The position numbers were made by a program, and so were the translations under genes. Below the pieces are notes generated by a model, which saw only the letters and a program-made list of their open reading frames with translations, was not told the origin of the DNA and ran no database searches. From IMG/VR virus record IMGVR_UViG_3300023184_000024, positions 62,001 through 126,000 of that record: a stretch of DNA of 64,000 bases; one strand, 5' to 3'. Shown here piece after piece: positions 51,817-63,883 of the stretch (position 1 is the first letter of the stretch; every line of letters begins with the position of its first letter).

Positions 51817-52034
51817 GTTTACACATCAATAGATTCATTGACAAACTCAAGGCCTCGGACAGTCGCGGCCAAAGAGACTTCATCATGACCATGTCAGAAG
51901 CCAAAGACCTTCATGCTGACATCACCAAGTTGCTGTTGGGACTTCATGTGCTACATGAACAAACACAGGCAAAAGCCGCATCAATGGCTCAAACAGACGA
52001 CATCGAAGTTGAAATACAAGGATCTTCATTTTAA
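51813..52034 (+). CDS. Hypothetical protein
   Basis: Coupled ORF. Confidence 0.6.
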   Translation: MSLHINRFIDKLKASDSRGQRDFIMTMSEAKDLHADITKLLLGLHVLHEQTQAKAASMAQTDDIEVEIQGSSF

Positions 52035-52076
52035 AACTACCCACATTAAGCATAAATAAAATGTAGGGAGTTTTCA

Positions 52077-52382
52077 ATGAGTAGACCAAAACCCAAAGTC
52101 CTATTAGACTTAACTAATAAGACCAGTTATAAAACCGAACAAGTTCTGGCAGCCGAAGGCATTTGGGCAGTATTCTTTGACGGCCAGCCAATCAACCTTA
52201 AAACCAGTAACCTGTTGGTGCAGTATCCTGGACCAAAGTATAAAAAGGTAAGTTTTTCAAACCAAGGTCACGCCATTAATTTGGCCAAAAAATTAAACAC
52301 ACAATTTCGGTCAGATAAATTTTCAGTGGTGTTGTTGACATCTGGTCAACAAATCTTTCCCAATGAAAACAGTAAAGCGTGA
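52077..52382 (+). CDS. Hypothetical protein
   Basis: ATAAATA (52052) and GGGAG RBS upstream; YKKVSFSN.GHA motif. Confidence 0.7.
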   Translation: MSRPKPKVLLDLTNKTSYKTEQVLAAEGIWAVFFDGQPINLKTSNLLVQYPGPKYKKVSFSNQGHAINLAKKLNTQFRSDKFSVVLLTSGQQIFPNENSKA

Positions 52383-52725
52383 TCTCACTGAGCACATCTT
52401 AAATTTGTTGCCCGAGGGTAACCAAATTACAATAGACCAAGCACTTAAAACATGGTATCAAAATATTAGACCCAATGGCGGTCTGCGATTAACCAGTGCT
52501 GGTTATCAGGTCCTGCAGTTATTGAATATCGAATCTTGGACGATAGAATTTGATAATATTAAAAAACATATTTCTCAACGAGAATTGCTGAGCTTAGACC
52601 ATAAAATCAAATACCCTTATTACATTGATTTTAAAGGCAAACGTCTTATTCTATTTTCCAGTAAAGAAGCAATGTTGGCTACACTCTACGGGGACCTAAA
52701 AAAATTCCTTGAAAATTACAGTTGA
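52363..52725 (+). CDS. Hypothetical protein
   Basis: Overlapping operon ORF. Confidence 0.6.
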   Translation: MKTVKRDLTEHILNLLPEGNQITIDQALKTWYQNIRPNGGLRLTSAGYQVLQLLNIESWTIEFDNIKKHISQRELLSLDHKIKYPYYIDFKGKRLILFSSKEAMLATLYGDLKKFLENYS

Positions 52726-52750
52726 CCAGAAATTCAACTTCGGTTATACT
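52722..52750 (+). promoter_or_regulatory. sigma70 early promoter (cassette 1)
   Basis: TTGACC-N17-TATACT. Confidence 0.8.
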
Positions 52751-52777
52751 GTAAGTACAGTAAAAGAAAGGGAATAT

Positions 52778-52945
52778 ATGTCAAAATATACATTTATTGT
52801 TAACCCTAAAGTTAAAGAGATATTGGAATTATCCGATAAACTCCGTGAATGTTTAGAGTATCCCAACAGCGAAAACTCAAGGGATGAGCGACACTACTCA
52901 GAGCATTTTGAAGCTGAGATTATCAAGGTTATCAAGAGAAAATAA
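52778..52945 (+). CDS. 55-aa hypothetical early protein
   Basis: True start is ATG 52778 downstream of the promoter and a GGGA RBS. Confidence 0.6.
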   Translation: MSKYTFIVNPKVKEILELSDKLRECLEYPNSENSRDERHYSEHFEAEIIKVIKRK

Positions 52946-52948
52946 CCA

Positions 52949-53015
52949 ATAATATTATCGATAATCCCGATAATATTATCGATAATCCAGCTTAATCCAG
53001 CTTATATTCCAGCTT
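52949..53015. repeat. Tandem palindromic repeats in intergenic DNA
   Basis: ATAATATTATCGATAATCC at 52949 and 52970, each containing the palindrome ATTATCGATAAT; then three TCCAGCTT units. Confidence 0.8.
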
Positions 53016-53071
53016 GTTGTTAAAAAACAACACAGATTTTGGTTGACCAGAATTGCAAGATCGGTTATAAT
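53016..53071 (+). promoter_or_regulatory. GTTG-N8-CAAC operator plus sigma70 promoter (cassette 2)
   Basis: GTTG(53016)-N8-CAAC(53031); TTGACC(53043)-N17-TATAAT(53071). Confidence 0.8.
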
Positions 53072-53077
53072 ACTAGT

Positions 53078-53416
53078 ATGGAAATTAAAAAAGCAACCCG
53101 CAAAAAACGTGCAGATCGCACTCACATCATTTACCGCATTGAGAGCGGTGCAGACTTCTACATTGGTGTCACAGCCAAAACAGAAAGCACTGTTTTGAAG
53201 AGTGTAAAAACACGCATCAACAAGCACATCTATCGCTCACGTAGCGAAGACAAAAGCTGGGCCTTGTACGAAGCAATTCGTGCTCGCGGCACTGGTGCTT
53301 TCCAGTTCCGTATCGTTGCAGTTGTGCGTGGCAAAACAGAAGCTCACACCGCAGAACGTGCTCTGATCCGTGAACTCAAGCCCAACTTGAACACCGATGT
53401 ACGTGGTGTTGTTTAA
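53078..53416 (+). CDS. GIY-YIG-like nuclease domain protein
   Basis: IIYRIE...FYIGVT; R...H; HxAE..LI..LKPNLN; start ATG 53078. Confidence 0.7.
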
Positions 53417-53464
53417 ACGCAACACTACATTTTGGTTGACCAGAATTCGCCAATTTCGTATAAT
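53408..53464 (+). promoter_or_regulatory. GTTG-N8-CAAC operator plus sigma70 promoter (cassette 3)
   Basis: GTTG(53408)-N8-CAAC(53423); TTGACC(53436)-N17-TATAAT(53464); AAGGAG RBS. Confidence 0.85.
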
Positions 53465-53494
53465 ACGAGTATAGTAAACAAAAAGGAGTCAAAT

Positions 53495-53779
53495 ATGTCA
53501 TACGTAATCGTTGCAAAAGGTACCGGTTTAATTGTCACAGACGGTCCCAACAAAACCCGTGCCTACAAAACATTTGGTGCCGCTAAAGCAACTCGTACCC
53601 GTCTCTGCACCAAAGCAGGGTGGACAGAAGACCAACTCAACATTGTGGATCGCATCACTTACACCGCTCCCCAGAGACGGATGACTGTACTCAACTTGAT
53701 GACAGGCAAGCCTGTTGAGATTGATGCTGACACACCTTGGGCTTGCCGTGTAGACAGCGAAACATACTGGAGCAATTAA
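53495..53779 (+). CDS. Hypothetical early protein
   Basis: True start ATG 53495 after AAGGAG; C-terminal TPW.C.VDSETYW motif. Confidence 0.7.
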   Translation: MSYVIVAKGTGLIVTDGPNKTRAYKTFGAAKATRTRLCTKAGWTEDQLNIVDRITYTAPQRRMTVLNLMTGKPVEIDADTPWACRVDSETYWSN

Positions 53780-53780
53780 T

Positions 53781-54011
53781 ATGACAAATATCGCACCACG
53801 TTCTTTTACATTTGATGTCGTAGTAAGAGAAACTGCCGATGGTCGTGTCACCCGGTCCTCCACAGGCGGACCATGGCTACGATTGGCCAGAAAAATGGCC
53901 AAAGCTGGCACAGCCCGACTTGCAGTACAAGGCGGCGGCGTTATGGGGTACGGACGCTCATATGATGTTGGTTATTCTAAGTTGATTTATACAGTAACGG
54001 AGATTGTATAA
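53781..54011 (+). CDS. Hypothetical protein
   Basis: Coupled ORF. Confidence 0.55.
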   Translation: MTNIAPRSFTFDVVVRETADGRVTRSSTGGPWLRLARKMAKAGTARLAVQGGGVMGYGRSYDVGYSKLIYTVTEIV

Positions 54012-54154
54012 TGAAAGTCATTTACAACGGTTTGCTGGCAGGTTGGTACATTGTGCGTGGCGCACATCAAACACCCATTTCGGGCAGATTTGACAGTAAA
54101 GAATTGGCACTGGCCCATTTGCGTAGACGCAATCCTTTTCACACAGGAATTTAA
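54011..54154 (+). CDS. 47-aa hypothetical protein (below ORF-track cutoff)
   Basis: TAATG overlap; MKVIYNGLLAGWYIVRGAHQTPISGRF. Confidence 0.6.
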   Translation: MKVIYNGLLAGWYIVRGAHQTPISGRFDSKELALAHLRRRNPFHTGI

Positions 54155-54155
54155 A

Positions 54156-54557
54156 ATGGAAGTCTATATTGAAGGTCGTACAAAGGCCTGTAAATTTGTA
54201 GAGTCATTGATTCCCTCCATGCTGGAACAATTGAAGCTGACCAAAAGCCGAAAACTCTTGCACATCATTCTTGACCCCGATATCGACGAGCTTGGCAGTA
54301 CCATTCCATTGGATGGCATAGACACTTACTTGGTGGTTCTCAAGCCCACCCGAGACTTGTTTGCCTTGGGTGCTACCTTGGCGCACGAGCTCACCCATGT
54401 GTCACAATTTGCCAAAGGCACTCTACAGGTCACACCCAAAGGAAAGAAATGGCGTGGCAAGTTCTACGGCCGCAACGTCCCGTATCTAAATCAACCTTGG
54501 GAAATACAAGCATTTTCCAAGCAAGAAATTGTAATGCGCAGGGCCATAGAGCTTTGA
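54156..54557 (+). CDS. Zincin-like HExxH protein
   Basis: TLAHELTHVSQ; PWEIQA; AGGA RBS supports ATG 54156. Confidence 0.75.
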   Translation: MEVYIEGRTKACKFVESLIPSMLEQLKLTKSRKLLHIILDPDIDELGSTIPLDGIDTYLVVLKPTRDLFALGATLAHELTHVSQFAKGTLQVTPKGKKWRGKFYGRNVPYLNQPWEIQAFSKQEIVMRRAIEL

Positions 54558-54723
54558 TGTTGTGCAAAACCAGCCCCAAATCAGTGGCTAAAAGTAGTAC
54601 TTGAGTTTGCAGTTTTAACCCCTAAAACTAGTACTAAAGTACACATTTTTCTCTGTCAGGGTGTTTAATTTCCCTAGATGTTGTGCAAACGCATCTTAGC
54701 ACACAAAAACAGCGTAAAACCGC

Positions 54724-54755
54724 GGTTGACCAGAAATACCCATTTTGCTATAATA
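54724..54755 (+). promoter_or_regulatory. sigma70 promoter (cassette 4), 32 bp identical to 55029-55060
   Basis: GGTTGACCAGAAATACCCATTTTGCTATAATA. Confidence 0.85.
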
Positions 54756-54783
54756 CGAGTATAGTAAGAAAAAGGAGCTAAAA

Positions 54784-55011
54784 ATGATTCATCAAAACAT
54801 ACAAAAACTCATCAATGATTACCAGGAAATTCTGGACCGAGATCCCATGGATCAGAAGGAAGACACTCAAAGCATTCTCACTCGCTTTGCCCAAGTATTG
54901 GCCACAGAGCTAGGCGAAATCGTAGTAGCAAGTCCTTACATGGAAGGCGTTCACATGTACTTTGACGAGAAGATTGCTCGCTATGAAATTAAGCAAGCAG
55001 TAGGGTTGTAA
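54784..55011 (+). CDS. Hypothetical early protein
   Basis: AAGGAG RBS after the promoter. Confidence 0.7.
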   Translation: MIHQNIQKLINDYQEILDRDPMDQKEDTQSILTRFAQVLATELGEIVVASPYMEGVHMYFDEKIARYEIKQAVGL

Positions 55012-55060
55012 AAAAACAACGGTATTTTGGTTGACCAGAAATACCCATTTTGCTATAATA
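55005..55060 (+). promoter_or_regulatory. GTTG-N8-CAAC operator plus sigma70 promoter (cassette 5)
   Basis: GTTG(55005)-N8-CAAC(55020); TTGACC(55031)-N17-TATAAT(55059). Confidence 0.85.
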
Positions 55061-55089
55061 GAAGTATAGTAAGAAACAAGGAGCACTAA

Positions 55090-55467
55090 ATGACTACAGA
55101 CTTCAAAAGTTGGGACGAGTTAAGCGATTTGGAACAAGCCCAAGCCACTTTTTGGGACATGTATAAGGACGCCTACGGTGTTCGTCCCCGTGGTGTTGAT
55201 ACCTCTGCTTGGACTCTTGATGATTTTACATCTGAGTTTGTGATCCTTGGTCAAGCCATTGACCGTGAAGAGACAGCTCGCAAGGCGTCAGAAGCTCAGG
55301 CTGTCACAGCCTTTGAGCGCCGTATTGCTGAATTGATCAGCACAGGCGCCCGGGACTATGAAATGGCTCTGCGCTGGATTCACGAAGCCGAAGAGACTCG
55401 TGGCGACGATGACTATCTTGCCTGGACTCTGGGCTTGCCCTATCAATACTTCCGCAAAGCGGCTTAA
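55090..55467 (+). CDS. Hypothetical early protein
   Basis: AAGGAG RBS; YKDAYGVRPRG motif. Confidence 0.72.
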   Translation: MTTDFKSWDELSDLEQAQATFWDMYKDAYGVRPRGVDTSAWTLDDFTSEFVILGQAIDREETARKASEAQAVTAFERRIAELISTGARDYEMALRWIHEAEETRGDDDYLAWTLGLPYQYFRKAA

Positions 55468-55476
55468 GGAGCAACA

Positions 55477-55899
55477 ATGAAACACACTATTCTACTAGAA
55501 AATGGTACATATCTGCAGGTCAATGACCTGGGCTGGACTGAGCGTAAGACGCCCCGGCAGTACAAAAACCTGGCAGAAGCCCAACATCATTTACAATGGG
55601 GCATTGCCATGTGCCACACCAATGTCAAACTCAGAACAGACTACATTGCGGCCTATCATCGAGACAAAACTAGATTTGAAAAGGCTGTTGCCAAAGAACA
55701 GTCTCTAATCAAAAAGCTAGAGACACAACCTTATAACAAGGTAGCAGATCAGATTAAGAAAGCACTATTCAACATTGATCAACTCACTGTTAAGTTTTAT
55801 CCCAAAAGCCGTCTTGAGGACTTCAAGCGTGACACCAAGTTTTTGGCGAGTGCCAAAAGAGTACTGGCCAACAACCCCAGAGTTGTTGCTTTAGGTTGA
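55477..55899 (+). CDS. Hypothetical protein
   Basis: AAGGAG RBS. Confidence 0.68.
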   Translation: MKHTILLENGTYLQVNDLGWTERKTPRQYKNLAEAQHHLQWGIAMCHTNVKLRTDYIAAYHRDKTRFEKAVAKEQSLIKKLETQPYNKVADQIKKALFNIDQLTVKFYPKSRLEDFKRDTKFLASAKRVLANNPRVVALG

Positions 55900-55924
55900 C
55901 CAAAAAGGTCCAATTTAGTATAAT
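55896..55924 (+). promoter_or_regulatory. sigma70 promoter (cassette 6)
   Basis: TTGACC-N17-TATAAT, then CATAGTAAGAAAAAGGAG. Confidence 0.85.
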
Positions 55925-55953
55925 ACAAGCATAGTAAGAAAAAGGAGAACACA

Positions 55954-56265
55954 ATGATTGCAGAACTAAATCGATTAAAAGCATTAAAAGAAAGCCCCAG
56001 CCGTGGCGTCAGGGATGAGATTGAGATTTCTCAACTGGAAACTATGCTGGGCCAGAGTGCCTATTATGATCAACGACATGGCGGTCCTTACGATCGCGGT
56101 CAGGCAGACAGCTACTACGGTCGCGACTATATGCCGCATTACTTTGTGAGAGACACTCACCGTAGTCCTAGAATTGACATGGCGCAGATGACTGAGCATG
56201 AGATTGTGGCCTATACCGCAGGCTATCGCGACAACGAAGCCAATGGCGATAAGAAGGAGTGGTAA
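55954..56265 (+). CDS. Hypothetical early protein
   Basis: RHGGPYDRG.ADSYY motif; AAGGAG RBS. Confidence 0.7.
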   Translation: MIAELNRLKALKESPSRGVRDEIEISQLETMLGQSAYYDQRHGGPYDRGQADSYYGRDYMPHYFVRDTHRSPRIDMAQMTEHEIVAYTAGYRDNEANGDKKEW

Positions 56266-56266
56266 G

Positions 56267-56452
56267 ATGAGTAAGATGAGCGATTTATCAATTGAAATTG
56301 ACAGCATGCTAGAAGCAGGTTACTTGCCTGTGACCATTGCTAGAAATCTAGAAATCCCAGTGACCTGGGTCTACGAAACCGCCGACGTAGATACCGATGC
56401 GGACGAGGACATCACCGATGAACTCAGCCCATTTGAAACCATCAACAGTTAA
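56267..56452 (+). CDS. Hypothetical protein
   Basis: Start ATG 56267 after AAGGAG. Confidence 0.55.
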   Translation: MSKMSDLSIEIDSMLEAGYLPVTIARNLEIPVTWVYETADVDTDADEDITDELSPFETINS

Positions 56453-56461
56453 GGAACTGCC

Positions 56462-56863
56462 ATGACCATGCCTGCTGGAAAGTATTACATTGGTGACTTG
56501 TGCTATGTCATGCATGACGAATGGGACGAGTGTTGTAGCCTTTTCTTTCCCACTAACCAAAGTGGCCGTGGCGTAGAAGGTGAGTTCCAACTACGTGACG
56601 GGCGACAATTTGCCAGCTTTGGTACTGCCTACGGCGATGGCGAATACTACGACAACATGGGCGACAGTCATTGCGTGGACTCGGGGTCAATTGGTTGTAT
56701 CCGTGTGGCGGACATTCGCGATGAAACCTACGGCAACATTGAATCTTTGGGTTCCGTTGTGGAATTTAAAGAACCCTTTGAAGTTGAAAAAGTAGGCAGA
56801 GGCCTGCTGAAATTTGGACACGTGGAAATTGATACAGATCCTGTCTATGACGAAACCTATTAA
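56462..56863 (+). CDS. Hypothetical protein
   Basis: YYIGDLCYV, TAYGDGEY, VDSGSIGC motifs; AAGGA RBS. Confidence 0.7.
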   Translation: MTMPAGKYYIGDLCYVMHDEWDECCSLFFPTNQSGRGVEGEFQLRDGRQFASFGTAYGDGEYYDNMGDSHCVDSGSIGCIRVADIRDETYGNIESLGSVVEFKEPFEVEKVGRGLLKFGHVEIDTDPVYDETY

Positions 56864-57167
56864 CAAGTTAGTTGACAATGGCCGGGTGGCGGTGTTATAC
56901 TCGCCGGGCTTTGGCGCAGGTTGGTCAACTTGGAATCAAGGAGTGCCAGATCTCATGTTTGATCCTGCTATTGTAAAATTTGTAGAGGATGACCAATGGG
57001 CAGAGTTAAACACCTATGTCACACTCAAGTACCCGGGTATCTACACAGGCGGCATGAGAGACTTGGCTGTAGCCTGGCTACCTGTGGGTACTGAGTTTCG
57101 AATCGGCGAACACGACGGTGCAGAAAACATTGAGGTAAAAGACAACCAACTTTGGTTTGTTGCCTAA
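56847..57167 (+). CDS. Hypothetical protein
   Basis: VAVLYSPGFGAGWSTW motif; start approximate. Confidence 0.65.
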   Translation: MTKPINKLVDNGRVAVLYSPGFGAGWSTWNQGVPDLMFDPAIVKFVEDDQWAELNTYVTLKYPGIYTGGMRDLAVAWLPVGTEFRIGEHDGAENIEVKDNQLWFVA

Positions 57168-57227
57168 TTGCATTGACTTGTAATTGGATTTGCTGTAAAA
57201 TTTGACTTTAAACAAAGGGTATTAACT

Positions 57228-57749
57228 ATGATCACTCTCAAAGAATGGATGGAAACCGTTGACTATCGTATCACAGAAGGCAGTGAATACACTTGGAATT
57301 GTTTTGGCAACAATTCCTACAGTCTAGATTCATGGAATGGTGAACAAGATGGTCACGCATTCCATATTATTTTTGATACTCGCACACAGGAAGTTTATCA
57401 AGTTGATGCTCACGACTACAAGAACCGTCGTAGTTATCGAATGACCAATCCCGACTATCTTGACGCCTACAACAAGTCAGTTAAACATCATAGCATCAAT
57501 GATGTTGCCTATGATGATGTTAAATTTATTGACTTGGAAGTTGAGGAAGATTGGCTTGAAAAAGCTCGTTGTATCTTCCTTGGCAACGATTACGACACGC
57601 GAGTACAATTGCCCATAGATTTTTCAGATGAGGAACTGTTGACTCACATGAAGGCCGCACATGACATGGATATTACATTTAATCAATACGTTGTGCAGGC
57701 CCTGACAGCGGCCATAGACAATCATCGTACAACGCAGGAGTCAAAATGA
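57228..57749 (+). CDS. Hypothetical protein
   Basis: 173-aa ORF after a TTGACT..TAAAAT promoter-like site. Confidence 0.7.
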   Translation: MITLKEWMETVDYRITEGSEYTWNCFGNNSYSLDSWNGEQDGHAFHIIFDTRTQEVYQVDAHDYKNRRSYRMTNPDYLDAYNKSVKHHSINDVAYDDVKFIDLEVEEDWLEKARCIFLGNDYDTRVQLPIDFSDEELLTHMKAAHDMDITFNQYVVQALTAAIDNHRTTQESK

Positions 57750-58054
57750 ATATTGTAAAACCACACCCAAATGTTTATATACGCACCACAGTGAACATTG
57801 ACTTGAGTGCCGAACAATGGGGACTGCACACAAGTTCGTTTTCTCGAACAATGGTTGAGAAGGTTGCTACATTCCTTAACAAAAAAGTCACACATACCTT
57901 TAACATTGGGTGTGATAGAAAAACTGTGGAAGAACACTTTAATTGTCTAGCAGATCATTTTAAATTATACGGTGCCACTAACAAGAATACTCAAGCTATT
58001 CTTAAAGGCTTGCTGGATGAACTGTTTAGTAGCCGTGCTATTAACAAAAAATGA
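57746..58054 (+). CDS. Hypothetical protein
   Basis: AGGAG RBS, coupled. Confidence 0.6.
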   Translation: MNIVKPHPNVYIRTTVNIDLSAEQWGLHTSSFSRTMVEKVATFLNKKVTHTFNIGCDRKTVEEHFNCLADHFKLYGATNKNTQAILKGLLDELFSSRAINKK

Positions 58055-58377
58055 CCGATGACCAGCAATTGTTTTGGGACATTATTTCCTGCAATTATTC
58101 TCGCATCAGCCATGTCTGGGGGCGAGAAATGCAGGACTTGGTCATGAGAAACAAGATGAAAAAGTTTCACCGTATGGCTGACAACTGTGTTTCTGCTGTG
58201 TTGTTGTGGCCCGCTGATGCCAGAGCTCGGGCAGTAAAAACTTGGTTGAGCAGTTATCGGTTACCATTTGATCCCAGGCGAATGGACTCATTTGATGATT
58301 TTCATAAAACAACTGCTTCGTACATTTTTAACAATGCTAAACATATCCACAGCTACGATGAGAATTTGACTACATAA
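58051..58377 (+). CDS. Hypothetical protein
   Basis: Coupled ORF. Confidence 0.55.
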   Translation: MTDDQQLFWDIISCNYSRISHVWGREMQDLVMRNKMKKFHRMADNCVSAVLLWPADARARAVKTWLSSYRLPFDPRRMDSFDDFHKTTASYIFNNAKHIHSYDENLTT

Positions 58378-58385
58378 AAGATCAC

Positions 58386-58462
58386 GGGCCGTTAGCTCAT
58401 TAGGTTAGAGCAGTGGACTCATAATCCATTGGTGGAGTGTTCGAATCACTCACGGCCCACCA
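58386..58462 (+). tRNA. tRNA with CAT anticodon, probably Ile2 (lysidine type)
   Basis: GGGCCGT/ACGGCCC acceptor, CUCAUAA loop, encoded CCA; D/anticodon arms resemble E. coli ileX. Confidence 0.85.
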
Positions 58463-58481
58463 AATATATTGAAAGACTAAA

Positions 58482-58730
58482 ATGAAAACAACAGATAAAA
58501 AAATCAAAGTTGAATTTGCACCAGGTGCGTTTGATGATTTCGAAGGCACACAAGAAGAGCTGGATCAACTGCAAGAAGAACTGTTGACATTGTTTTCTGA
58601 GTTGACTCCTGAAGAATTGTCGTTGAGAAGTATGCCAGTTGATCTTGATGCGTTGAGTGCCGAAGATCCTGATGTTGCTGAAAAGATTGCAAACTTTTTA
58701 GGCGATGATGCTACACGAGTACTGCAATAA
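58482..58730 (+). CDS. Acidic hypothetical protein
   Basis: 82-aa ORF. Confidence 0.6.
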   Translation: MKTTDKKIKVEFAPGAFDDFEGTQEELDQLQEELLTLFSELTPEELSLRSMPVDLDALSAEDPDVAEKIANFLGDDATRVLQ

Positions 58731-59290
58731 TGGCCAAGATTGCTAAAAGTCCTGACCGACATACCTTTCAAAAAGAAGGTTATATTAAACGCATGAAAGA
58801 ACAGGGCAAAGAGCCAAATCCCGACTACGTTGAAATGTATAAAACTTGGCGTGTGCAGGATGAGGCTAACGTAGTAGATCCTGCTTGGCAAAAAGACAAC
58901 ATGGAGTACGACTTGCGTGTTGCAACTTGGATCTGCGACAAAGCCAAGGCCAGCGAGGCATACGCTCAAAACTTGTATGCGGCCATGTGCAACAGAGACT
59001 TCATGAAAAACGACGTTATGCCAATACTCAAAGATCAGCGTTGGAGTGCCAGTTGGCGTCATGCAGGAGGCATTGTTGCTGACATGCGGGAAGAAGGTGA
59101 CTATATTGATTGGTACTGCTCGGGCATTGGCGGTACGATGGCTGGCGGCAATGAGTCTGATCCTGCAATAGAAGAGGCCATACTGGCTAGAAAAAATTAC
59201 GTGCCAGAGGGCACCATCACTGACGAGATACGAGAAGATTTATTCCGACTGGGTTGGATTGTGTTGGAAGAAGACGACAACGACCAGTGA
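58730..59290 (+). CDS. Hypothetical protein
   Basis: YAQNLYAAMCN, WRHAGGIVAD, DYIDWYCSG motifs. Confidence 0.7.
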   Translation: MAKIAKSPDRHTFQKEGYIKRMKEQGKEPNPDYVEMYKTWRVQDEANVVDPAWQKDNMEYDLRVATWICDKAKASEAYAQNLYAAMCNRDFMKNDVMPILKDQRWSASWRHAGGIVADMREEGDYIDWYCSGIGGTMAGGNESDPAIEEAILARKNYVPEGTITDEIREDLFRLGWIVLEEDDNDQ

Positions 59291-59499
59291 CGCAGGTAAC
59301 ACTTTTACATATCAATGTTGACAAGGTATTTCAAATAGTTGGCACCTTGAAATCACAGGGCTATCAACTTGGCATTGATTTTGATTTTGCTTACTATCAA
59401 AGCCGATGGGACGAAATGATCGGGGAAATCCCTAGATCAACAATCTTTACTTTTTATTCTGACAGCGTGGCGCTATGGTTTAGTTTAAAGTACCGTTGA
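59287..59499 (+). CDS. Hypothetical protein
   Basis: GTGA overlap start at 59287. Confidence 0.55.
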   Translation: MTQVTLLHINVDKVFQIVGTLKSQGYQLGIDFDFAYYQSRWDEMIGEIPRSTIFTFYSDSVALWFSLKYR

Positions 59500-59519
59500 T
59501 TGACGTGTAAATACTTTGA

Positions 59520-61274
59520 ATGACACACTCGATTGCACTAGTACAAGCCAATGATATAATAGGTAACAATGTTAGGTTACCATTGGCCATCGGTGTACTT
59601 TGGCAGCAGGCAATGACTAGTACACTTAATTCTAACAAGTGGGAATTAGAAAAAATAGTTCACGCTAAATTACCCGTAAACGAAACAGCACAACAATTGT
59701 CGCACTGCGATGTTGTTGCATTTAGTTGCTATGTGTGGAACTTTGAATACCACATGCAACTGGCACAAGCTATTAAAAAAATAAACCCAACTTGCTTTGT
59801 AGTAGTTGGTGGTCCTCAAATACACACAGGGTTTGTGGACTTTTGGCCAGCATGGGGACACTGCATAGACTTTGCATTACTGGGCGAAGGTGACAACAGT
59901 TTTTGCCAATTGTTGGAACAGTGGCCCGCCCAACAAAGCAGTGCCATTCCGGGTGCCTGGACCAAAGACTGGTGTCAAGGCGAAGCACCAAGAACTGAAA
60001 ACCTAACTACATTACCCAGTCCGTACTTGAACGGATTCTACGATTCAATCATCCAAGAAGAAACAGCCAAGGGCCATTATATTGAAGCTGTGCTCCAGAC
60101 CAATCGAGGATGCCCATACCATTGTACTTTTTGTGAAGAAGGCAAAGAGTACAAAAATAAAATGTTCTTCTACGACGAAAAACAAATACGCCAAGAAATA
60201 GAATGGTTTGGTATCAACAAAATTGAAATGGTGGACATTGCCGATGACAATTGGGGAATTGCTGACAGAGATGTTGACCTCATGCAGTATATCTGTGAAA
60301 CAAAACTCAAATACGGATACCCCAACGTGCTCGATGCCACGTATGCCAAGAATGCTCCTGATCGATTATGGGCAATTGCCAAGATAGATCATCGATTCGG
60401 AACCAAGTTGATCAGAGGTATAACATTTGCATATCAAAGCAACAACACAGAAACACTGTCTGCAATTAAAAGATTCAATCTTGTGCCAGACAAGCAGTAC
60501 CAACTGATCAAAAAGCTAAAAAGTATCGGAACTCCTACCTACGTAGAAATGATCTGGCCACTGCCGTATGAAACATATCAAACATTTTGTCAGGGCATTG
60601 ACGACACAATCGACCTAGGACTTGATACTTGGTTACAAGTGTACACCTTGGGTATGAGTCCTTCCACTGATTTATATGATGATTTCGTCAACAGCTACGA
60701 CTTGGCTGCTAGTAAAAGTAATCAAAGTTTTATACCTGCGTTTGCAACCCCTGTCAGTAATAAGTGGGTGACCAACGAAACAATGATACAAGGGCAGGTA
60801 TTTTATACGTGGCTAGCGGTGCTGTATTATTTTGGGTTTGCAAGGCCTGTACTTGAATGGTTTAAATTATCAAAGGGACAAACAATCACTCAAACTGTTG
60901 ATAAATTCATTGAGTTTGCCGGCTCAGACACAACGTTGTGTGCATACAAAGAAAAAATCAACAACTACTGGCAACAAAGTATTTTAAAACAACCATTGCC
61001 TGACATTGGTATGTTTAAAAATTCCACAGACTTTTGGCAACCATACACGCATCTGGCCAGCTGGTTACAACACGATCATGACAATTTTATAGTCAGCGTC
61101 GGCGAATTTTTAGAATCACAACAGTTAGATACATCGGACATATCAAGGTTGACAGAGAAACTCAAACACTGTATAGTTAAGTTTTCCCACAGTGATGCTG
61201 ACAAGTTTTTTAATTTTTGCCAGCAATACTATTTCTACAAACGAAAATCTGGTGCATCTTATGTGTCGCCATAA
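59520..61274 (+). CDS. Cobalamin-binding radical SAM protein
   Basis: N-terminal LPLAIGVL, AFSCYVWN and VVGGPQ (B12-binding domain); TNRGCPYHCTFC. Confidence 0.88.
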   Translation: MTHSIALVQANDIIGNNVRLPLAIGVLWQQAMTSTLNSNKWELEKIVHAKLPVNETAQQLSHCDVVAFSCYVWNFEYHMQLAQAIKKINPTCFVVVGGPQIHTGFVDFWPAWGHCIDFALLGEGDNSFCQLLEQWPAQQSSAIPGAWTKDWCQGEAPRTENLTTLPSPYLNGFYDSIIQEETAKGHYIEAVLQTNRGCPYHCTFCEEGKEYKNKMFFYDEKQIRQEIEWFGINKIEMVDIADDNWGIADRDVDLMQYICETKLKYGYPNVLDATYAKNAPDRLWAIAKIDHRFGTKLIRGITFAYQSNNTETLSAIKRFNLVPDKQYQLIKKLKSIGTPTYVEMIWPLPYETYQTFCQGIDDTIDLGLDTWLQVYTLGMSPSTDLYDDFVNSYDLAASKSNQSFIPAFATPVSNKWVTNETMIQGQVFYTWLAVLYYFGFARPVLEWFKLSKGQTITQTVDKFIEFAGSDTTLCAYKEKINNYWQQSILKQPLPDIGMFKNSTDFWQPYTHLASWLQHDHDNFIVSVGEFLESQQLDTSDISRLTEKLKHCIVKFSHSDADKFFNFCQQYYFYKRKSGASYVSP

Positions 61275-61327
61275 TGTTGTTTTTTGACAACATACTGGTT
61301 GACAAGGTATAAATAAACACATATAAT
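61275..61327 (+). promoter_or_regulatory. TGTTG-N8-CAACA operator plus sigma70 promoter of the attenuator/tRNA region
   Basis: GTTG(61276)-N8-CAAC(61291); TTGACA(61299)-N17-TATAAT(61327). Confidence 0.8.
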
Positions 61328-61337
61328 AGAGACTATA

Positions 61338-61448
61338 ATGAACTCCGCTCATTTAAACGCACTGTCAGGACAGCAGAAAACTACAAGTTATTTGTGGTCA
61401 CCTGTCTGCCCACGTACAATTGATAATGAGATACCGGGTTCTGAGTAG
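61338..61448 (+). CDS. Putative 36-aa leader peptide
   Basis: MNSAHLNALSGQQKTTSYLWSPVCPRTIDNEIPGSE*; begins near the predicted TSS; the stop lies in the 5' arm of the antiterminator. Confidence 0.45.
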   Translation: MNSAHLNALSGQQKTTSYLWSPVCPRTIDNEIPGSE

Positions 61449-61513
61449 AATCAAATTTAACACATTTTTTACTCAGAACCCCGGGAATTAAAACTTCCGG
61501 GGTTTTGTTTTTT
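61436..61513 (+). terminator. Intrinsic terminator with overlapping antiterminator hairpin (attenuator)
   Basis: GGGTTCTGAGTA(61436)/TACTCAGAACCC(61481) 12-bp stem overlaps terminator AACCCCGG(61477)...CCGGGGTT(61504) plus T-tract. Confidence 0.75.
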
Positions 61514-61521
61514 AGGACAAC

Positions 61522-61689
61522 ATGAAAACAGAAAACGATTTATATAAAAGAATTGAAGAGAAGAACAACATCTTGTGCAAAGATCTGTACAAACAGCTCA
61601 TTGACGGTAAAATGCAACGAGCTTCTATTCAGCATCGAGCACATCAGAAATTAAAAGATACTACAAAATCTTCTCAGAAATCAATGTAG
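61522..61689 (+). CDS. 55-aa basic hypothetical protein (below ORF-track cutoff)
   Basis: AGGA RBS; first ORF after the terminator. Confidence 0.5.
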   Translation: MKTENDLYKRIEEKNNILCKDLYKQLIDGKMQRASIQHRAHQKLKDTTKSSQKSM

Positions 61690-61793
61690 TATCAAAGTGT
61701 TGACAGGAAACGAGGTCCTGTGCTACACTCAAAACAAGCACAAACGGGCGGTAACGAGGATGGCTTATCTTTTTGTAGATAAAAAAATTCGTT

Positions 61794-61858
61794 ATATTGA
61801 AGCATTCTTGTCCATGGAGTTGGGAACGGGAAGATAAACCGTGAGAGTGTTTCAATAT
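61794..61858 (+). other. Long hairpin in tRNA-cluster spacer
   Basis: ATATTGAAGCATTCT / AGAGTGTTTCAATAT, 15-bp stem with GU pairs. Confidence 0.6.
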
Positions 61859-61888
61859 GCACATTCCTCAGAGTGTGTTATTGAATTT

Positions 61889-61963
61889 ATCGCTGTCGTT
61901 CAACGAACAGGACACCATGCTACGAACGTGGGAATGGAGGTTTGATTCCTTCCAGCGATACCA
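61889..61963 (+). tRNA. tRNA-Arg(ACG), non-canonical elbow
   Basis: ATCGCTG/CAGCGAT acceptor, CUACGAA loop, CCA; D-loop G18A19 and T-loop U56. Confidence 0.8.
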
Positions 61964-61965
61964 GG

Positions 61966-61994
61966 TTGACCAATAATTGGTTTGGTAGTATAAT
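61966..61994 (+). promoter_or_regulatory. sigma70-type promoter
   Basis: GGTTGACC-N17-TATAAT directly after tRNA-Arg. Confidence 0.8.
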
Positions 61995-62015
61995 TTGTTT
62001 TTTAAGGAGAAGTGT

Positions 62016-62210
62016 ATGAAGCACAAGATGATCGTGCCACAACGTAACCCCTTCGTTGTGTTGGCACTAAAACGCAAAGCGGGTAGTCATCGCAAGAGCA
62101 ACAAAGCTCTGCGTCGATGCGAAAAATCTAGGGATCGTGGTGAAGCGGTATCACAGCAGACTTTTAATCTGCCAATCCCGAGTTCGAATCTCGGCGGTCC
62201 CACCATATAA
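62016..62210 (+). CDS. Small basic protein whose 3' end overlaps tRNA-Lys
   Basis: AAGGAG RBS; QRNPFVVLALKRKAGSHRKSNKALRR; the frame continues through the tRNA. Confidence 0.5.
   Translation: MKHKMIVPQRNPFVVLALKRKAGSHRKSNKALRRCEKSRDRGEAVSQQTFNLPIPSSNLGGPTI
62131..62205 (+). tRNA. tRNA-Lys(TTT)
   Basis: GCAGA-CTTTTAA-TCTGC anticodon arm; TTCGAAT; CCA. Confidence 0.92.
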
Positions 62211-62271
62211 AAACACATTGGTGTTGGTTTAACAAATAAGTAAACCTAGTTATAGTGTGTTTCTATATGGT
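62202..62271 (+). other. Long hairpin in tRNA-cluster spacer
   Basis: ACCATATA/TATATGGT plus AAACACAT/GTGTGTTT and inner GGTTTA/TAAACC. Confidence 0.6.
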
Positions 62272-62277
62272 AGAGTT

Positions 62278-62367
62278 GGAACGGTCCCATAATGGTATTG
62301 GAGCGGATTGCTAATCCGTCGAGTGGTGAAAGCCGCTTTCTGGGTTCAAGTCCCAGTCGTTCCGCCA
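62278..62367 (+). tRNA. tRNA-Ser(GCT)
   Basis: TTGCTAA loop, long variable arm, G73, CCA. Confidence 0.93.
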
Positions 62368-62374
62368 ACATTTT

Positions 62375-62450
<76 letters not shown>

Positions 62451-62457
62451 AACATAT

Positions 62458-62533
<76 letters not shown>

Positions 62534-62541
62534 ATTTCTTA

Positions 62542-62633
62542 ACCTCGGTAGTTTAACGGTAAAACAGCGGATTTATATCCCGTGCGCAACAGATAATTGG
62601 CCAATGTGGGTTCAACTCCCGCCCGAGGTACCA
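62542..62633 (+). tRNA. tRNA with TAT anticodon (nominal Ile-AUA) and a 22-nt variable arm
   Basis: ACCTCGG/CCGAGGT acceptor, TTTATAT loop (anticodon 62574-62576), 7/5 fold, A73, CCA. Confidence 0.75.
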
Positions 62634-62641
62634 TCAAGTTT

Positions 62642-62715
62642 GTATCCATAGTGTAATGGCAGCATCGCGGTCTCCAAAACCGTCAGTCTAGGTTCGAGTC
62701 CTAGTGGGTACGCCA
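62642..62715 (+). tRNA. tRNA-Trp(CCA)
   Basis: GCGGT-CTCCAAA-ACCGT; G73, CCA. Confidence 0.94.
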
Positions 62716-62731
62716 AATAAAGGAGCATAGT

Positions 62732-63337
62732 ATGCCAGCAGTATTTTTAGTCAGTGATACACACTTCGGACACGCTGGTGTGTGTCGCTTCATGCACCCC
62801 GATGATCCTGAAGTAAAATTACGGCCGTGGACTGATCCCGATGAGATGGATGAGGAAATGGTGCGACGATGGAACGACCGTGTGCGACCCAACGACAAGG
62901 TCTACCATTTGGGCGATGTTGTCATCAACCGTAAGGCCATGAAAACCTTGCATCGCTTGAATGGTGACAAGGTGTTGATACGCGGCAACCATGACATCTT
63001 CCGTGACGAGGAGTACAGAGAACACTTTCGTGAGTTGCGAGCATACCATGTCATGAACGGAATGATCTTGAGTCATATTCCTGTGCACGAAGCCAGCTTG
63101 GGCAGGTTTGGTACAAACATTCACGGACACTTGCACGCCAGTCGTGTAAAGAAAGTGCGTGGCTACGATGTCGAAACAGGTACCATGTTGTACAGCAACG
63201 AGATTGATCCACGCTACCATTGTGTCTGCGTAGAACAAACCGACTACACGCCCATCTTGTTTGAAGATGTGATCAAACGCATTGAAGCAGAAGGCGGTAG
63301 TGTGGGATTTAAAAACGGCAACGGACCAACTATGTAA
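62732..63337 (+). CDS. Calcineurin-like metallophosphoesterase
   Basis: SDTHFGH, HLGDV, RGNHD, LSHIP, HGHLH. Confidence 0.92.
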   Translation: MPAVFLVSDTHFGHAGVCRFMHPDDPEVKLRPWTDPDEMDEEMVRRWNDRVRPNDKVYHLGDVVINRKAMKTLHRLNGDKVLIRGNHDIFRDEEYREHFRELRAYHVMNGMILSHIPVHEASLGRFGTNIHGHLHASRVKKVRGYDVETGTMLYSNEIDPRYHCVCVEQTDYTPILFEDVIKRIEAEGGSVGFKNGNGPTM

Positions 63338-63342
63338 TACAT

Positions 63343-63417
63343 CGCGGGGTGGAGAAGTGGTAACTCATCGGGCTCATAACCCGAAGATCGACGGTTCGAA
63401 TCCGTCCCCCGCAACCA
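63343..63417 (+). tRNA. Initiator tRNA-fMet(CAT)
   Basis: C1:A72 mismatch, GGG/CCC anticodon stem, CCA. Confidence 0.94.
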
Positions 63418-63418
63418 A

Positions 63419-63883
63419 TTACTGAGTAATTTGCCCTGTTACAGCATCCACATGCACAGGTTGGCGATCAGCAAATGTAAAATCATAAAAAGGATTGCCT
63501 CGATAATCAACAGTTTGGCGTAATCTACAGAACAACCAAACATTTGTGATACCTGCTTTGGTCATAGCCTGTTGTGCTTGAGCACAACTCAGTGTAGGTG
63601 GATATACAAATGCCTGACACTCAGCCACACGAGAGTCATCAAAAGTGGGACCAGTGGCATTGCCCGTAATGTCAACAGTTATAGCATAAGGCTTGGTATC
63701 TTCGGATCCTTGCCAGCAGGTATACATAGTGCCATTATGGTCAGCCTCAGCAAGATAAAATTTAGATCCGTTTTGATGTAGATCCATAAGGCTTTTGGCT
63801 CCCCAGATCTGTTGATCAAAACTCAAGGGAGACAACAACCTTAGTCGTCGTAAATACTGTTTTATACGTGTTATTATTGACAT
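63419..63883 (-). CDS. Hypothetical protein with PepSY-like C-terminus (only minus-strand gene)
   Basis: AAGGA RBS upstream on the minus strand; LSCAQAQQAM...YDFTF...VHVDAVTGQI. Confidence 0.6.
   Translation of the reverse strand: MSIITRIKQYLRRLRLLSPLSFDQQIWGAKSLMDLHQNGSKFYLAEADHNGTMYTCWQGSEDTKPYAITVDITGNATGPTFDDSRVAECQAFVYPPTLSCAQAQQAMTKAGITNVWLFCRLRQTVDYRGNPFYDFTFADRQPVHVDAVTGQITQ

What the first reader, a model, noticed from the sequence alone, without database searches (positions are those of the whole stretch)
53016..61291. Recurrent GTTG-N8-CAAC palindrome just upstream of -35 boxes
Seen: exact GTTG-N8-CAAC at 53016, 53408, 55005 and 61276, each 7-12 nt before TTGAC; variants GTTG-N8-CAGC (54559) and GTTG-N8-CATC (54680). 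The spacer length is fixed while its sequence varies. Five of the six sites overlap or directly follow the upstream stop codon. Inference: an operator for an unidentified dimeric phage or host regulator (activator position) or a recombinase site marking cassette boundaries, linking early cassettes and the tRNA attenuator into one regulon.
Basis: partly seen in the sequence, partly recalled or inferred. Interest (0 to 1): 0.6.

Follow-up and report, generated by a model that had tools for sequence, protein, structure and literature searches.

The report
Conserved dyad capping phage early-promoter cassettes
The GTTG-N8-CAAC palindrome is real: it is the core of an 18-bp dyad at the upstream edge of a shuffled, roughly 95-bp early-promoter cassette found in one clade of uncultivated giant phages, and it looks more like a sequence-specific recognition site than an ordinary terminator, though what reads it is unknown.

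Summary
The four exact sites (53016, 53408, 55005, 61276) are confirmed. Each lies 7-12 nt before a near-consensus sigma70 promoter. The two "variants" (54559, 54680) do not fit the family.

The full motif is T-GTTG-Y-(A/T)6-R-CAAC-A, centred near -54 of the inferred start. Genome-wide, 9 of 32 GTTG-N8-CAAC sites abut a promoter, against 0-1 for any other spacing.

The composite (dyad plus GGTTGACC-N17-TATAAT) occurs in at least 118 IMG/VR stretches and in none of 596 Gb of prokaryote genomes. Among 712 non-redundant promoter-like sites, 100 carry the exact core. Pairs 1, 2 and 4 never vary, and only one alternative half-site exists (GTGGC), with hybrids. The family has fixed spacing, an A- or T-tract centre, strict Y/R positions without covariation and rarely a T-run after the stem, and a few sites also carry a true terminator. 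These features favour sequence-specific recognition over a generic hairpin.

The architecture and the cassette shuffling among relatives match PeSLs of T4-like phages, here in a different jumbo-phage lineage. The half-site and position resemble P2 Ogr sites, but the spacing differs and no Ogr homologue is present.

No binding protein is identified, and an RNA stem-loop role is not excluded.

The parts
53015..53032 (.). Dyad 1 (core 53016-53031, loop A6; TGTTGTT/AACAACA can pair as 7 bp)
   Evidence: RNA MFE -5.8 kcal/mol
53043..53071 (+). Sigma70-type promoter TTGACC-N17-TATAAT, 11 nt after dyad 1. It drives a leaderless GIY-YIG ORF.
53078..53416 (+). GIY-YIG homing-endonuclease-like ORF (112 aa). 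Its ATG lies 6 nt after the -10 box. Its last codons and stop form the left arm and loop of dyad 2.
53407..53424 (.). Dyad 2 (core 53408-53423). It contains the TAA stop of the GIY-YIG ORF, and the stem can extend to 10 pairs.
   Evidence: -13.5 kcal/mol
53436..53464 (+). Promoter 12 nt after dyad 2, followed by the conserved leader, SD and an ATG at 53495
55004..55021 (.). Dyad 3 (core 55005-55020). It contains the TAA stop of ORF 54784-55011. The flanks are G/G, not T/A.
   Evidence: -4.1 kcal/mol
55031..55059 (+). Promoter 10 nt after dyad 3, then leader, SD and an ATG at 55090
61275..61292 (.). Dyad 4 (core 61276-61291, T-rich loop), directly after the TAA of the radical-SAM ORF 59520-61274
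   Evidence: -7.7 kcal/mol
61299..61327 (+). Perfect-consensus promoter TTGACA-N17-TATAAT, 7 nt after dyad 4. Its transcript runs into the terminator at 61474-61507, ahead of the tRNA cluster.
54559..54574 (.). Not a family member: position 12 is C and no promoter lies within 150 nt.
54680..54695 (.). Not a family member. It is the second copy of the direct repeat GATGTTGTGCAAA and part of a different conserved palindrome (TGTGC-N12-GCACA) that is also seen in relatives.
54726..54754 (+). Promoter of the same class without a dyad
55869..55888 (+). Inverse-order hairpin CAACAAC-N6-GTTGTTG, 7 nt before promoter 55896-55924. It is conserved in a relative (L070).
52722..52750 (+). Promoter of the same class embedded in the 3' end of ORF 52363-52725, with no dyad
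61474..61507 (+). Canonical intrinsic terminator (13 pairs, T-run, -20.5 kcal/mol). It shows what a real terminator looks like in this phage.

Best explanation
GTTG-N8-CAAC is the invariant core of an 18-20-bp dyad, (G)T-GTTG-Y-(A/T)6-R-CAAC-A(C). The dyad is the optional upstream block of a modular early-promoter cassette of about 95 bp. The order is: upstream stop codon, dyad, short A/T tract, GGTTGACC-N17-TATAAT, conserved leader, Shine-Dalgarno and ATG (some genes are leaderless). The cassette is shared by a clade of uncultivated phages of about 330-365 kb (IMG/VR). It flanks small ORFan and homing-endonuclease genes, and these genes are inserted, deleted and swapped among relatives by recombination within the conserved module. 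This is the PeSL principle described for T4-like phages, and these points are shown here. What follows is inferred. The dyad itself acts on double-stranded DNA as a sequence-specific site for a dimeric protein. That protein would sit at about -54, in the zone where the RNA polymerase alpha C-terminal domains and class-I-type activators such as P2 Ogr work, and it would modulate a subset of the strong host-RNAP-dependent early promoters. Whether it activates, represses or insulates cannot be told. The protein is unidentified and may be a phage ORFan product or a host factor.
For: Promoter linkage is specific to the N8 spacing: 9 of 32 sites against 0-1 for other spacings. The composite pattern occurs in at least 118 IMG/VR stretches and in none of 596 Gb of prokaryote genomes. 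Relatives of 330-364 kb carry 2-11 copies of the 18-mer, against 0-2 for the reversed control. Five cultured relatives carry 0-1.

Conservation is all-or-none. Among 712 non-redundant promoter-like sites there are 100 exact cores. Pairs 1, 2 and 4 show neither single nor compensatory variants, with 0-1 each.

Position 5 is always Y and position 12 always R (93 of 93), with no covariation: C/G is seen 8 times against 9.6 expected, and C/A mismatches make up 27%. Top-strand and bottom-strand wobble combinations are equally common, so there is no strand asymmetry of the kind an RNA helix would show.

The centre is an A-tract or a T-tract and almost never self-complementary. This distal A/T tract is 92-96% AT at -52 to -56 in dyad promoters. 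Dyad-less promoters of the same class show 59-72% there, so the tract belongs to the dyad and not to the promoter.

The gap to the -35 box peaks at 10-11 nt, with a minor class at 21-29 nt.

Only 18 of 102 sites have a terminator-grade T-run after the stem. RNA MFE averages -7 kcal/mol, against -14 to -20 for real terminators in these phages. Twelve of 113 sites also carry a canonical terminator, 7 before and 5 after the dyad.

Cassette architecture and shuffling are shown. The PeSL definition comes from PMC2839356 and PMC4122927.

The annotated P2 Ogr sites share the half-site (TGTTGT; pF is GTTG-N14-CAAC) and the position (-55 to -58). The Ralstonia P2-like motif TGTTGT-N13-ACAACA is reported in PMC5694545.
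Against: No binding protein was found. The genome has no Ogr_Delta, HTH_3, HTH_17 or RHH_1 match.

There is some evidence for base pairing. The flanking pair outside T/A covaries: 49 Watson-Crick pairs against 33 expected, and still 23-24 against 16 with one site per context, p about 0.003-0.01. The only alternative core, GTGG..CCAC, is a symmetric double change seen 8 times. It is often flanked by an A-run and a T-run like a true terminator.

Other promoters of the class carry unrelated hairpins or canonical terminators at the same place.

Five sites have a terminator between the dyad and the promoter, which puts the dyad too far away for a -54 operator.

The promoters are already consensus-strength, so an activator seems unnecessary. 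The same promoter works without the dyad in relatives.

The transcription start, and therefore the -54 position, is inferred from the -10 box and not measured.
Confidence: 0.45

Rival explanations
1. PeSL-type stem-loop acting in RNA. The palindrome is transcribed at the 3' end of the upstream gene and folds into a 5-10-bp hairpin. The hairpin attenuates or terminates read-through, or stabilises or processes the 3' end, and so insulates each strong promoter from the one before. The conserved sequence reflects common descent and recombination among cassettes, or recognition of the hairpin by an RNA-binding factor.
For: The layout of stop codon, stem-loop, AT-rich tract, sigma70 promoter, SD and ATG is that of the PeSLs of PST/T4 and nt-1/KVP40. 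The stop codon lies inside the dyad or no more than 5 nt before it in 47 of 96 sites. Contiguous stems are mostly 6-8 pairs, and MFE is -7.5 against -1.8 kcal/mol for shuffles. The outer pair covaries. The GTGG..CCAC variant is compensatory and terminator-like. Canonical terminators occupy the same slot in other cassettes. Site 53408 passes the simple terminator scan.
Against: 82% of sites lack a T-run after the stem, and the stems are weak compared with this clade's real terminators. No compensatory change occurs at pairs 1, 2 or 4 in more than 100 independent sites. Pair 5/12 does not covary, and C-A mismatches are as common as G-U. The loop length is fixed, unlike in ordinary terminators. 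Twelve sites already have a canonical terminator next to the dyad, 7 of them upstream of it, so the dyad would seldom be transcribed there.
Confidence: 0.3
2. Recombination or mobility site. The dyad, as duplex or as an extruded hairpin, is recognised and cut or synapsed by a phage nuclease or recombinase. This makes it the preferred crossover point for cassette exchange, in an integron-attC-like or REP/RAYT-like logic.
For: The dyads sit at cassette boundaries, and a GIY-YIG cassette is flanked by two of them. Hybrid dyads with one half of each type (GTGGC..ACAAC 3, GTTGY..GCCAC 4) look like crossovers inside the loop. In RB49 a PeSL mini-circle junction was mapped inside the loop. There are dyad presence/absence polymorphisms at orthologous junctions.
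Against: The breakpoints of exchanges between relatives are spread over the whole module (left arm, gap, -35, spacer, leader). They are not concentrated at the dyad, as expected for homologous recombination. No recombinase was linked to the site, and I ran no search for integrase or HUH transposase families. The dyad is far shorter than attC or REP elements.
Confidence: 0.1
3. No function of its own. The arms are hitch-hiking flanks of an upstream A/T tract (a distal UP-element subsite), or a relic of the module's ancestor that is kept uniform by gene conversion.
For: The centre of the dyad is an A/T tract at about -52 to -56, where a distal UP subsite would lie, and a second A/T tract sits at -38 to -42.
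Against: Dyad-less promoters of the same class have no distal A/T tract. The arms are invariant, while the gap, the promoter spacer and the loop next to them diverge freely. That pattern indicates selection on the arms, not homogenisation.
Confidence: 0.1

Closest known systems
PeSLs (promoter-early stem-loops) of T4-like phages (Arbiol et al. 2010, PMC2839356; Comeau et al. 2014, PMC4122927)
   Same: A composite of a short stem-loop directly upstream of an AT-rich tract and a strong sigma70-like early promoter, with SD and ATG at the 3' edge. Many copies lie between small ORFan genes, and relatives show insertion, deletion and replacement of those genes at the modules. The stem sequence is characteristic of each phage group.
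   Different: The host phage is not T4-like. Its closest cultured relatives by DNA polymerase and RNase H are Atu_ph07, Phosso, PA5oct and Rak2-like jumbo phages, at 42-51% aa identity. The stem is AT-rich, weak and mostly without a T-run, whereas the tested PeSL stem-loop was a strong terminator. The core is invariant with fixed spacing, and in 12 of 113 sites it co-occurs with separate canonical terminators. Only about a quarter of the promoters carry it.
Ogr/Delta activator sites of P2/P4-type late promoters (TGT-N12-ACA centred near -55)
   Same: The half-site is the same: P2 sites begin with TGTTGT, pF reads GTTG..CAAC, and the Ralstonia P2-like phages have TGTTGT..ACAACA. Both are dyad-symmetric. 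The centre lies at -55 to -58 in the annotated P2 record, against about -54 here. The outer bases also read TGT-N12-ACA.
   Different: The spacing between GTTG and CAAC is 8 here, 14 in P2 pF, and about 15 in phiRSY1. P2 late promoters lack a good -35 box and depend on the activator, whereas these promoters are consensus. No Ogr_Delta zinc-finger gene is present in the genome.
Intrinsic (rho-independent) terminators
   Same: An inverted repeat directly after a stop codon. The rarer GTGGC-W6-GCCAC form with A-run and T-run flanks fits the definition.
   Different: The stem has 2-3 G-C pairs and the MFE is about -7 kcal/mol. 82% of sites lack the T-run. The stem sequence is invariant instead of freely covarying.
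UP element / alpha-CTD binding region of strong promoters
   Same: A/T tracts at about -40 and about -54 upstream of a consensus -35 box.
   Different: The distal tract occurs only together with the conserved arms, and UP elements have no GTTG/CAAC arms.
PpsR/CrtJ operators (TGT-N12-ACA) and CRP-type 5-N6-5 operators
   Same: The outer TGT-N12-ACA spacing. The GTTGY-N6-RCAAC geometry (pentamers 11 bp apart) is that of helix-turn-helix dimers such as CRP; this comparison rests on my own knowledge.
   Different: The half-site sequence differs. Those proteins are host regulators of specific regulons, and no link to this phage or its unknown host was shown. This is only a lead from the literature search.

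Membership tests
PeSL (promoter-early stem-loop cassette) | Near-consensus sigma70-like early promoter within the repeated motif | tested here: met
   TTGACC/TTGACA-N17-TATAAT at 53043, 53436, 55031 and 61299. About 42 such promoters occur in the genome, almost all on the + strand.
PeSL (promoter-early stem-loop cassette) | [quoted passage not shown] | tested here: met
   Stems are mostly 6-8 pairs and the mean MFE is about -7 kcal/mol. There is an A/T tract at -38 to -42.
PeSL (promoter-early stem-loop cassette) | SD and start codon of the downstream gene at the 3' edge; located between small ORFan genes in variable regions | tested here: met
   Conserved leader with AAGGAG and ATG. The flanked ORFs have no Pfam or PHROG function, except the GIY-YIG ORF.
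PeSL (promoter-early stem-loop cassette) | Association with insertion, deletion or replacement of genes between close relatives | tested here: met
   In relatives, 52949-53497 joins directly to 55024-55490, and many other joins fall at modules.
PeSL (promoter-early stem-loop cassette) | The stem-loop works as a transcription terminator or attenuator | tested here: inconclusive
   By sequence criteria only 18 of 102 sites have a T-run, and the stems are weak.
PeSL (promoter-early stem-loop cassette) | Formation of cassette mini-circles | not testable with these tools
   This needs inverse PCR or reads.
PeSL (promoter-early stem-loop cassette) | Host phage is a T4-like myovirus | tested here: not met
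   The best cultured matches are Atu_ph07, Phosso, PA5oct and Rak2-like jumbo phages, at 42-51% aa identity.
Ogr/Delta-type activator site | Dyad with TGT-N12-ACA centred about -55 from the start | tested here: met
   T(-1) is present in 89% and A(+17) in 96% of sites, which gives TGT-N12-ACA. The centre is at about -54 for the modal gap, although the transcription start is inferred.
Ogr/Delta-type activator site | Same half-site spacing as the characterised sites | tested here: not met
   P2 pF is GTTG-N14-CAAC, and pV has about 13. Here the spacing is N8.
Ogr/Delta-type activator site | A cognate Ogr/Delta zinc-finger protein is encoded | tested here: not met
   PF04606 finds nothing in the genome at E <= 10.
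Ogr/Delta-type activator site | Activator-dependent promoter lacking a good -35 box | tested here: not met
   The promoters have a consensus -35 box.
Intrinsic terminator | G+C-rich stem followed at once by a T-run | tested here: not met
   82% of sites lack the T-run. The core has 2 G-C pairs. Of the four window sites, only 53408 passes the scan.
Operator of a dimeric DNA-binding protein | Dyad symmetry with invariant half-sites, fixed spacing, and independent evolution of the two halves | tested here: met
   Caveat: pair 3 and the outer flank pair covary.
Operator of a dimeric DNA-binding protein | A protein that binds it | not testable with these tools
   No candidate was found. The DsbA-like gene does not track the motif.
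Integron attC-like / REP-like recombination site | Crossovers confined to the site; a cognate recombinase | tested here: not met
   Breakpoints are spread through the module. I ran no search for a recombinase.

The most novel reading that the evidence does not exclude
The dyad is not a transcription signal. It is the recognition hairpin or duplex of a cassette-exchange machinery in jumbo phages, an attC-like site. Its two half-site alleles (GTTGY and GTGGC) recombine within the loop, which gives these phages an integron-like way to trade early genes.
Probability: 0.08. Interest if true: 0.85.

Novelty: new variant of a known kind. Interest (0 to 1): 0.5.

Why it matters
If the dyad is a protein-binding site, it defines a sub-regulon of early genes in a widespread clade of uncultivated giant phages. 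These genes are mostly ORFans and homing endonucleases, the likely host-takeover and anti-defence repertoire. It would also point to a regulator with no recognisable DNA-binding fold.

Independently of mechanism, the result extends promoter/stem-loop cassette shuffling (PeSLs) beyond T4-like phages. It shows that the boundary element can be under sequence-specific selection, not merely structural selection. The 44-55-bp composite is also a specific marker for this clade, with more than 118 hits in IMG/VR and none in 596 Gb of prokaryote genomes. It could be used to find the phages, delimit their early gene cassettes, and build strong portable promoters.

Tried and rejected
- **Close relatives among deposited phages:** a megablast of 52900-56900 found none.
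- **Genome identity:** a paper search for the genome size found nothing.
- **Host clue:** the composite pattern has no hit in genome contigs, so no host or prophage was identified. The host remains unknown.
- **Phage-encoded regulator:** Ogr_Delta, HTH_3, HTH_17 and RHH_1 all give nothing in the genome. Pfam and PHROGs on the cassette ORFs give only GIY-YIG and unknown families.
it matches a PHROG annotated as a transcriptional regulator. It is a core gene present in all five dyad-less cultured relatives as well as the five dyad-bearing ones, so it is rejected as a specific candidate.
- **Rfam:** only tRNAs appear in 52000-64000.
- **'The dyad belongs to the upstream gene':** I considered this after seeing identical promoters with and without it. 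I dropped it because other pairs show the dyad travelling with the downstream promoter and gene.
- **'The dyad is simply the distal UP subsite':** rejected, because dyad-less promoters lack that A/T tract.
- **Identity with the P2 TGT-N12-ACA site:** rejected on spacing.
- **Primary P4 delta paper:** PMC177091 is not held.
- **Sampling caveat:** the second IMG/VR sample is biased against short-gap dyads. Loci already fetched kept their old ids, so I used it only for variants and not for frequencies.

Full report
**Source of the window**

The window is bases 62001-126000 of a single 352,754-bp virus record (IMG/VR) with direct terminal repeats, rated complete. No deposited phage is close at the DNA level.

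By protein, the nearest cultured phages are jumbo phages. The RNase H-like ORF is 51% identical to Pseudomonas phage PA5oct. The DNA polymerase is 42-50% identical to Sinorhizobium phage Phosso, Agrobacterium phage Atu_ph07 and Rak2-like coliphages. The phage is therefore not T4-like. The host is unknown.

**The observation**

GTTG-N8-CAAC occurs exactly at 53016, 53408, 55005 and 61276. The window holds nine matches against 2.2 expected, and no shuffle out of 100 reaches nine.

Each of the four sites ends 7-12 nt before a promoter matching 11 or 12 of the 12 consensus positions of TTGACA-N17-TATAAT.

In the whole genome the raw count (32) is unremarkable beside other spacings (11-34). However, nine of the 32 lie within 25 nt upstream of a + strand promoter, against none or one for every other spacing from 0 to 16. 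The signal is thus a specific association between the N8 palindrome and promoters.

The two "variants" at 54559 and 54680 exist as written, but they are two copies of a direct repeat flanking a 121-bp ORF-free stretch. They break the family's rules (below) and are 150 and 30 nt from the next -35. I do not count them as members.

**Anatomy of the cassette**

The promoters belong to one class of about 42 in this genome, nearly all on the + strand. They share GGTTGACC, a 17-nt spacer ending in TGC, TATAAT, a conserved leader and AAGGAG.

- Nine or ten of these promoters carry the palindrome.
- The genes they drive are short ORFs without known families, plus a 112-aa GIY-YIG endonuclease-like ORF.
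- That ORF's ATG lies six bases after the -10 box, which predicts a leaderless mRNA.
- Its last codons and stop form the left arm and loop of the next palindrome.

**Distribution**

I searched for the composite pattern: palindrome, 7-13 nt, GGTTGACC-N17-TATAAT.

| Collection or genome set | Result |
|---|---|
| 596 Gb of prokaryote genomes | none |
| Five near-complete relatives of 330-364 kb (DsbA-like protein 72-81% identical) | 2-11 copies of the 18-mer TGTTGY-N6-RCAACA; reversed control 0-2 |
| Five cultured relatives (Atu_ph07, Phosso, 121Q, a Vibrio jumbo phage, PA5oct) | 0-1 copies |

The element is therefore a trait of one uncultivated clade.

**The motif and how it evolves**

I pooled this genome and the fetched loci and removed near-duplicates. 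Of 337 promoters, 93 have the exact core and only 7 have one mismatch. The rest are at background.

Alignment of the 93 gives T-GTTG-Y-(A/T)6-R-CAAC-A:

- The base before the core is T in 89% of sites, and the base after it is A in 96%.
- Position 5 is always a pyrimidine and position 12 always a purine.
- The centre is an A-run (about 70%) or a T-run (about 25%), and almost never self-complementary.

Positions 5 and 12 do not covary. C/G occurs 8 times against 9.6 expected, C/A mismatches make up 27%, and wobble combinations are equally common for either strand.

A wider set of 712 non-redundant promoter-like sites holds 100 exact cores:

- Core pairs 1, 2 and 4 show neither single nor compensatory variants (0-1 each).
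- Only pair 3 varies: GTGG..CCAC occurs 8 times, and the hybrids GTGG..CAAC and GTTG..CCAC occur 3 and 4 times.
- There are thus two half-site types, GTTGY and GTGGC, which also occur combined.

Set against this, the first pair outside T/A covaries. There are 49 Watson-Crick pairs against 33 expected, and still 23-24 against 16 with one site per upstream context. The GTGGC-W6-GCCAC form often has A-run and T-run flanks and folds at about -14 kcal/mol, like a true terminator.

**Is it a terminator?**

- The common form folds at -4 to -13 kcal/mol, with a mean of -7. The window's sites fold at -5.8, -13.5, -4.1 and -7.7. Canonical terminators in these phages fold at -14 to -20.
- Only 18 of 102 sites have five or more T in the eight bases after the stem.
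- Twelve of 113 sites carry a separate canonical terminator as well, seven before and five after the dyad.
- The upstream ORF's stop codon lies inside the dyad or within 5 nt in 47 of 96 sites. That fits tight packing as well as a 3'-end role.
- Other promoters of the class carry canonical terminators or unrelated hairpins in the same slot.

**Position relative to the promoter**

The gap from CAAC to TTGAC peaks at 10-11 nt (range 7-13), with a minor class at 21-29. If transcription starts 7 nt after the -10 box, which is inferred and not measured, the dyad centre is near -54.

All promoters of the class have an A/T tract at -38 to -42. The tract at -52 to -56 is 92-96% AT in dyad-bearing promoters and only 59-72% in the others. 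The spacer therefore belongs to the dyad and is not a general UP subsite.

**Cassette shuffling**

In relatives, the GIY-YIG cassette (52949-53497) is joined directly to the homologue of 55024-55490. The five ORFs between them here are absent there, and many other joins fall at the modules.

A block-wise comparison of 143 distinct instances shows breakpoints at the left arm, in the loop, in the gap, in the promoter and in the leader. The dyad can travel with the upstream gene or with the downstream promoter and gene. The same promoter occurs with and without it. This pattern fits homologous recombination within a conserved module and not a single crossover site.

**Comparison with known systems**

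The layout and the shuffling match PeSLs of T4-like phages. These are promoter-early stem-loop cassettes, described as composite promoter-terminator motifs that mediate modular shuffling. In PST and nt-1 the stem-loops sit just upstream of the promoter, and each phage group has its own stem consensus. What differs here:

- the phage lineage;
- the weak, AT-rich, invariant stem;
- the frequent lack of a T-run;
- in 12 of 113 sites, coexistence with real terminators.

The half-site and position also recall the Ogr/Delta activator sites of P2-type late promoters, reported as TGT-N12-ACA (PMC3931495) and as TGTTGT-N13-ACAACA in Ralstonia P2-like phages (PMC5694545). In the annotated P2 record the sites begin with TGTTGT, pF reads GTTG-N14-CAAC, and the centres lie 55-58 bp before the starts. 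Here the outer bases also read TGT-N12-ACA. But the GTTG/CAAC spacing is 8 rather than 14, the promoters have a consensus -35, and no Ogr_Delta gene is present. The dyad may work like such a site, but it is not a member of that family.

**Candidate proteins**

No HTH_3, HTH_17 or RHH_1 domain is detectable in the genome.

It is a core gene beside the DNA polymerase and is present in all five dyad-less cultured relatives as well. It does not track the motif.

**Verdict**

The well-supported part is this. The dyad is the upstream block of a PeSL-like early-promoter cassette that is shuffled among a clade of uncultivated jumbo phages.

The role of the dyad itself is unresolved. I favour a sequence-specific site for a dimeric protein at about -54 (0.45) over an RNA stem-loop or attenuator (0.30), a recombination site (0.10) or no function of its own (0.10). 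Four observations drive this ranking:

- the core never shows compensatory change;
- the spacing and the Y/R positions are fixed without pairing;
- the T-run is usually missing;
- true terminators sometimes sit beside the dyad.

The covariation at pair 3 and at the outer pair, and the terminator-like GTGGC form, keep the structural reading alive. RNA data could not be obtained.

Noticed in passing
window 53043-53416: The GIY-YIG endonuclease-like ORF (112 aa) starts 6 nt after the -10 box, with no Shine-Dalgarno, so a leaderless mRNA is predicted. Leaderless starts of homologous small GIY-YIG ORFs recur behind the same promoter module in many IMG/VR relatives. About 27% of dyad promoters are leaderless, against about 13% of dyad-less ones (hand count).
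   Followed up: partly
window 52946-53015: The intergenic stretch before dyad 1 is built of short direct repeats: ATAATATTATCGATAATCC twice, then CCAGCTTA-like units three times. The simple scan reads part of it as a 17-pair hairpin on the - strand. Related 'ataatcc...ccagc' repeats precede the same cassette in relatives.
   Followed up: no
window 54556-54700: A direct repeat GATGTTGTGCAAA (54556 and 54677) flanks a 121-bp ORF-free segment containing AGTAGTACT / ACTAGTACT motifs. The second copy is part of a palindrome TGTGC-N12-GCACA that is conserved before the same promoter in relatives (L084, L139). This may be a recombination scar or a small RNA. There is no Rfam hit.
   Followed up: partly
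relatives, e.g. L033, L010, L047, L123; window 54590-54640: A second sequence-conserved palindrome family (AAAAGTAGTACT - loop - AGTACTACTTTT, and AATACTYRAGTATT variants) lies upstream of promoters or of the GTTG dyad. The core AGTAC-N3-AGTAC resembles the cyanobacterial LexA-box consensus as I recall it. This was not tested.
   Followed up: no
genome 14790-14826 (outside the window); loci L127, L131, L134, L135, L147: A third palindrome family, GGTTAGT/GGTAAGT - loop - ACTAACC, occurs in the same slot before promoters of this class.
   Followed up: no
loci L006, L020, L041, L115, L120, L139, L144, L168, L209: An alternative dyad, GTGGC-W6-GCCAC, has the same geometry, often with A-run and T-run flanks (terminator-like, about -14 kcal/mol). 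Hybrids with the GTTGY half occur, and L041 carries a GTTG dyad, a canonical terminator and a GTGG dyad in one intergenic region.
   Followed up: yes
window 55869-55888: An inverse-order hairpin CAACAAC-N6-GTTGTTG uses the same arm sequence with the arms swapped. It lies directly before promoter 55896 and is conserved in relative L070.
   Followed up: partly
window 61299-61520: A perfect-consensus promoter is followed, after about 150 nt without an ORF of 40 aa or more on the + strand, by a strong canonical terminator (61474-61507). A 55-aa ORF and the tRNA cluster come next (10 tRNAs from 58386 to the window end, the last one cut). No Rfam family matches the leader.
   Followed up: partly
window 59520-61274: A 584-aa ORF has B12-binding and radical-SAM domains, both just below Pfam's cut-offs. 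It ends directly at dyad 4.
   Followed up: no
relatives G002, G003, G004; loci L001, L093, L138, L145: The 18-mer TGTTGTCATAATACAACA recurs inside a conserved coding region. It matches the dyad pattern but is explained by protein conservation and not by a promoter.
   Followed up: partly
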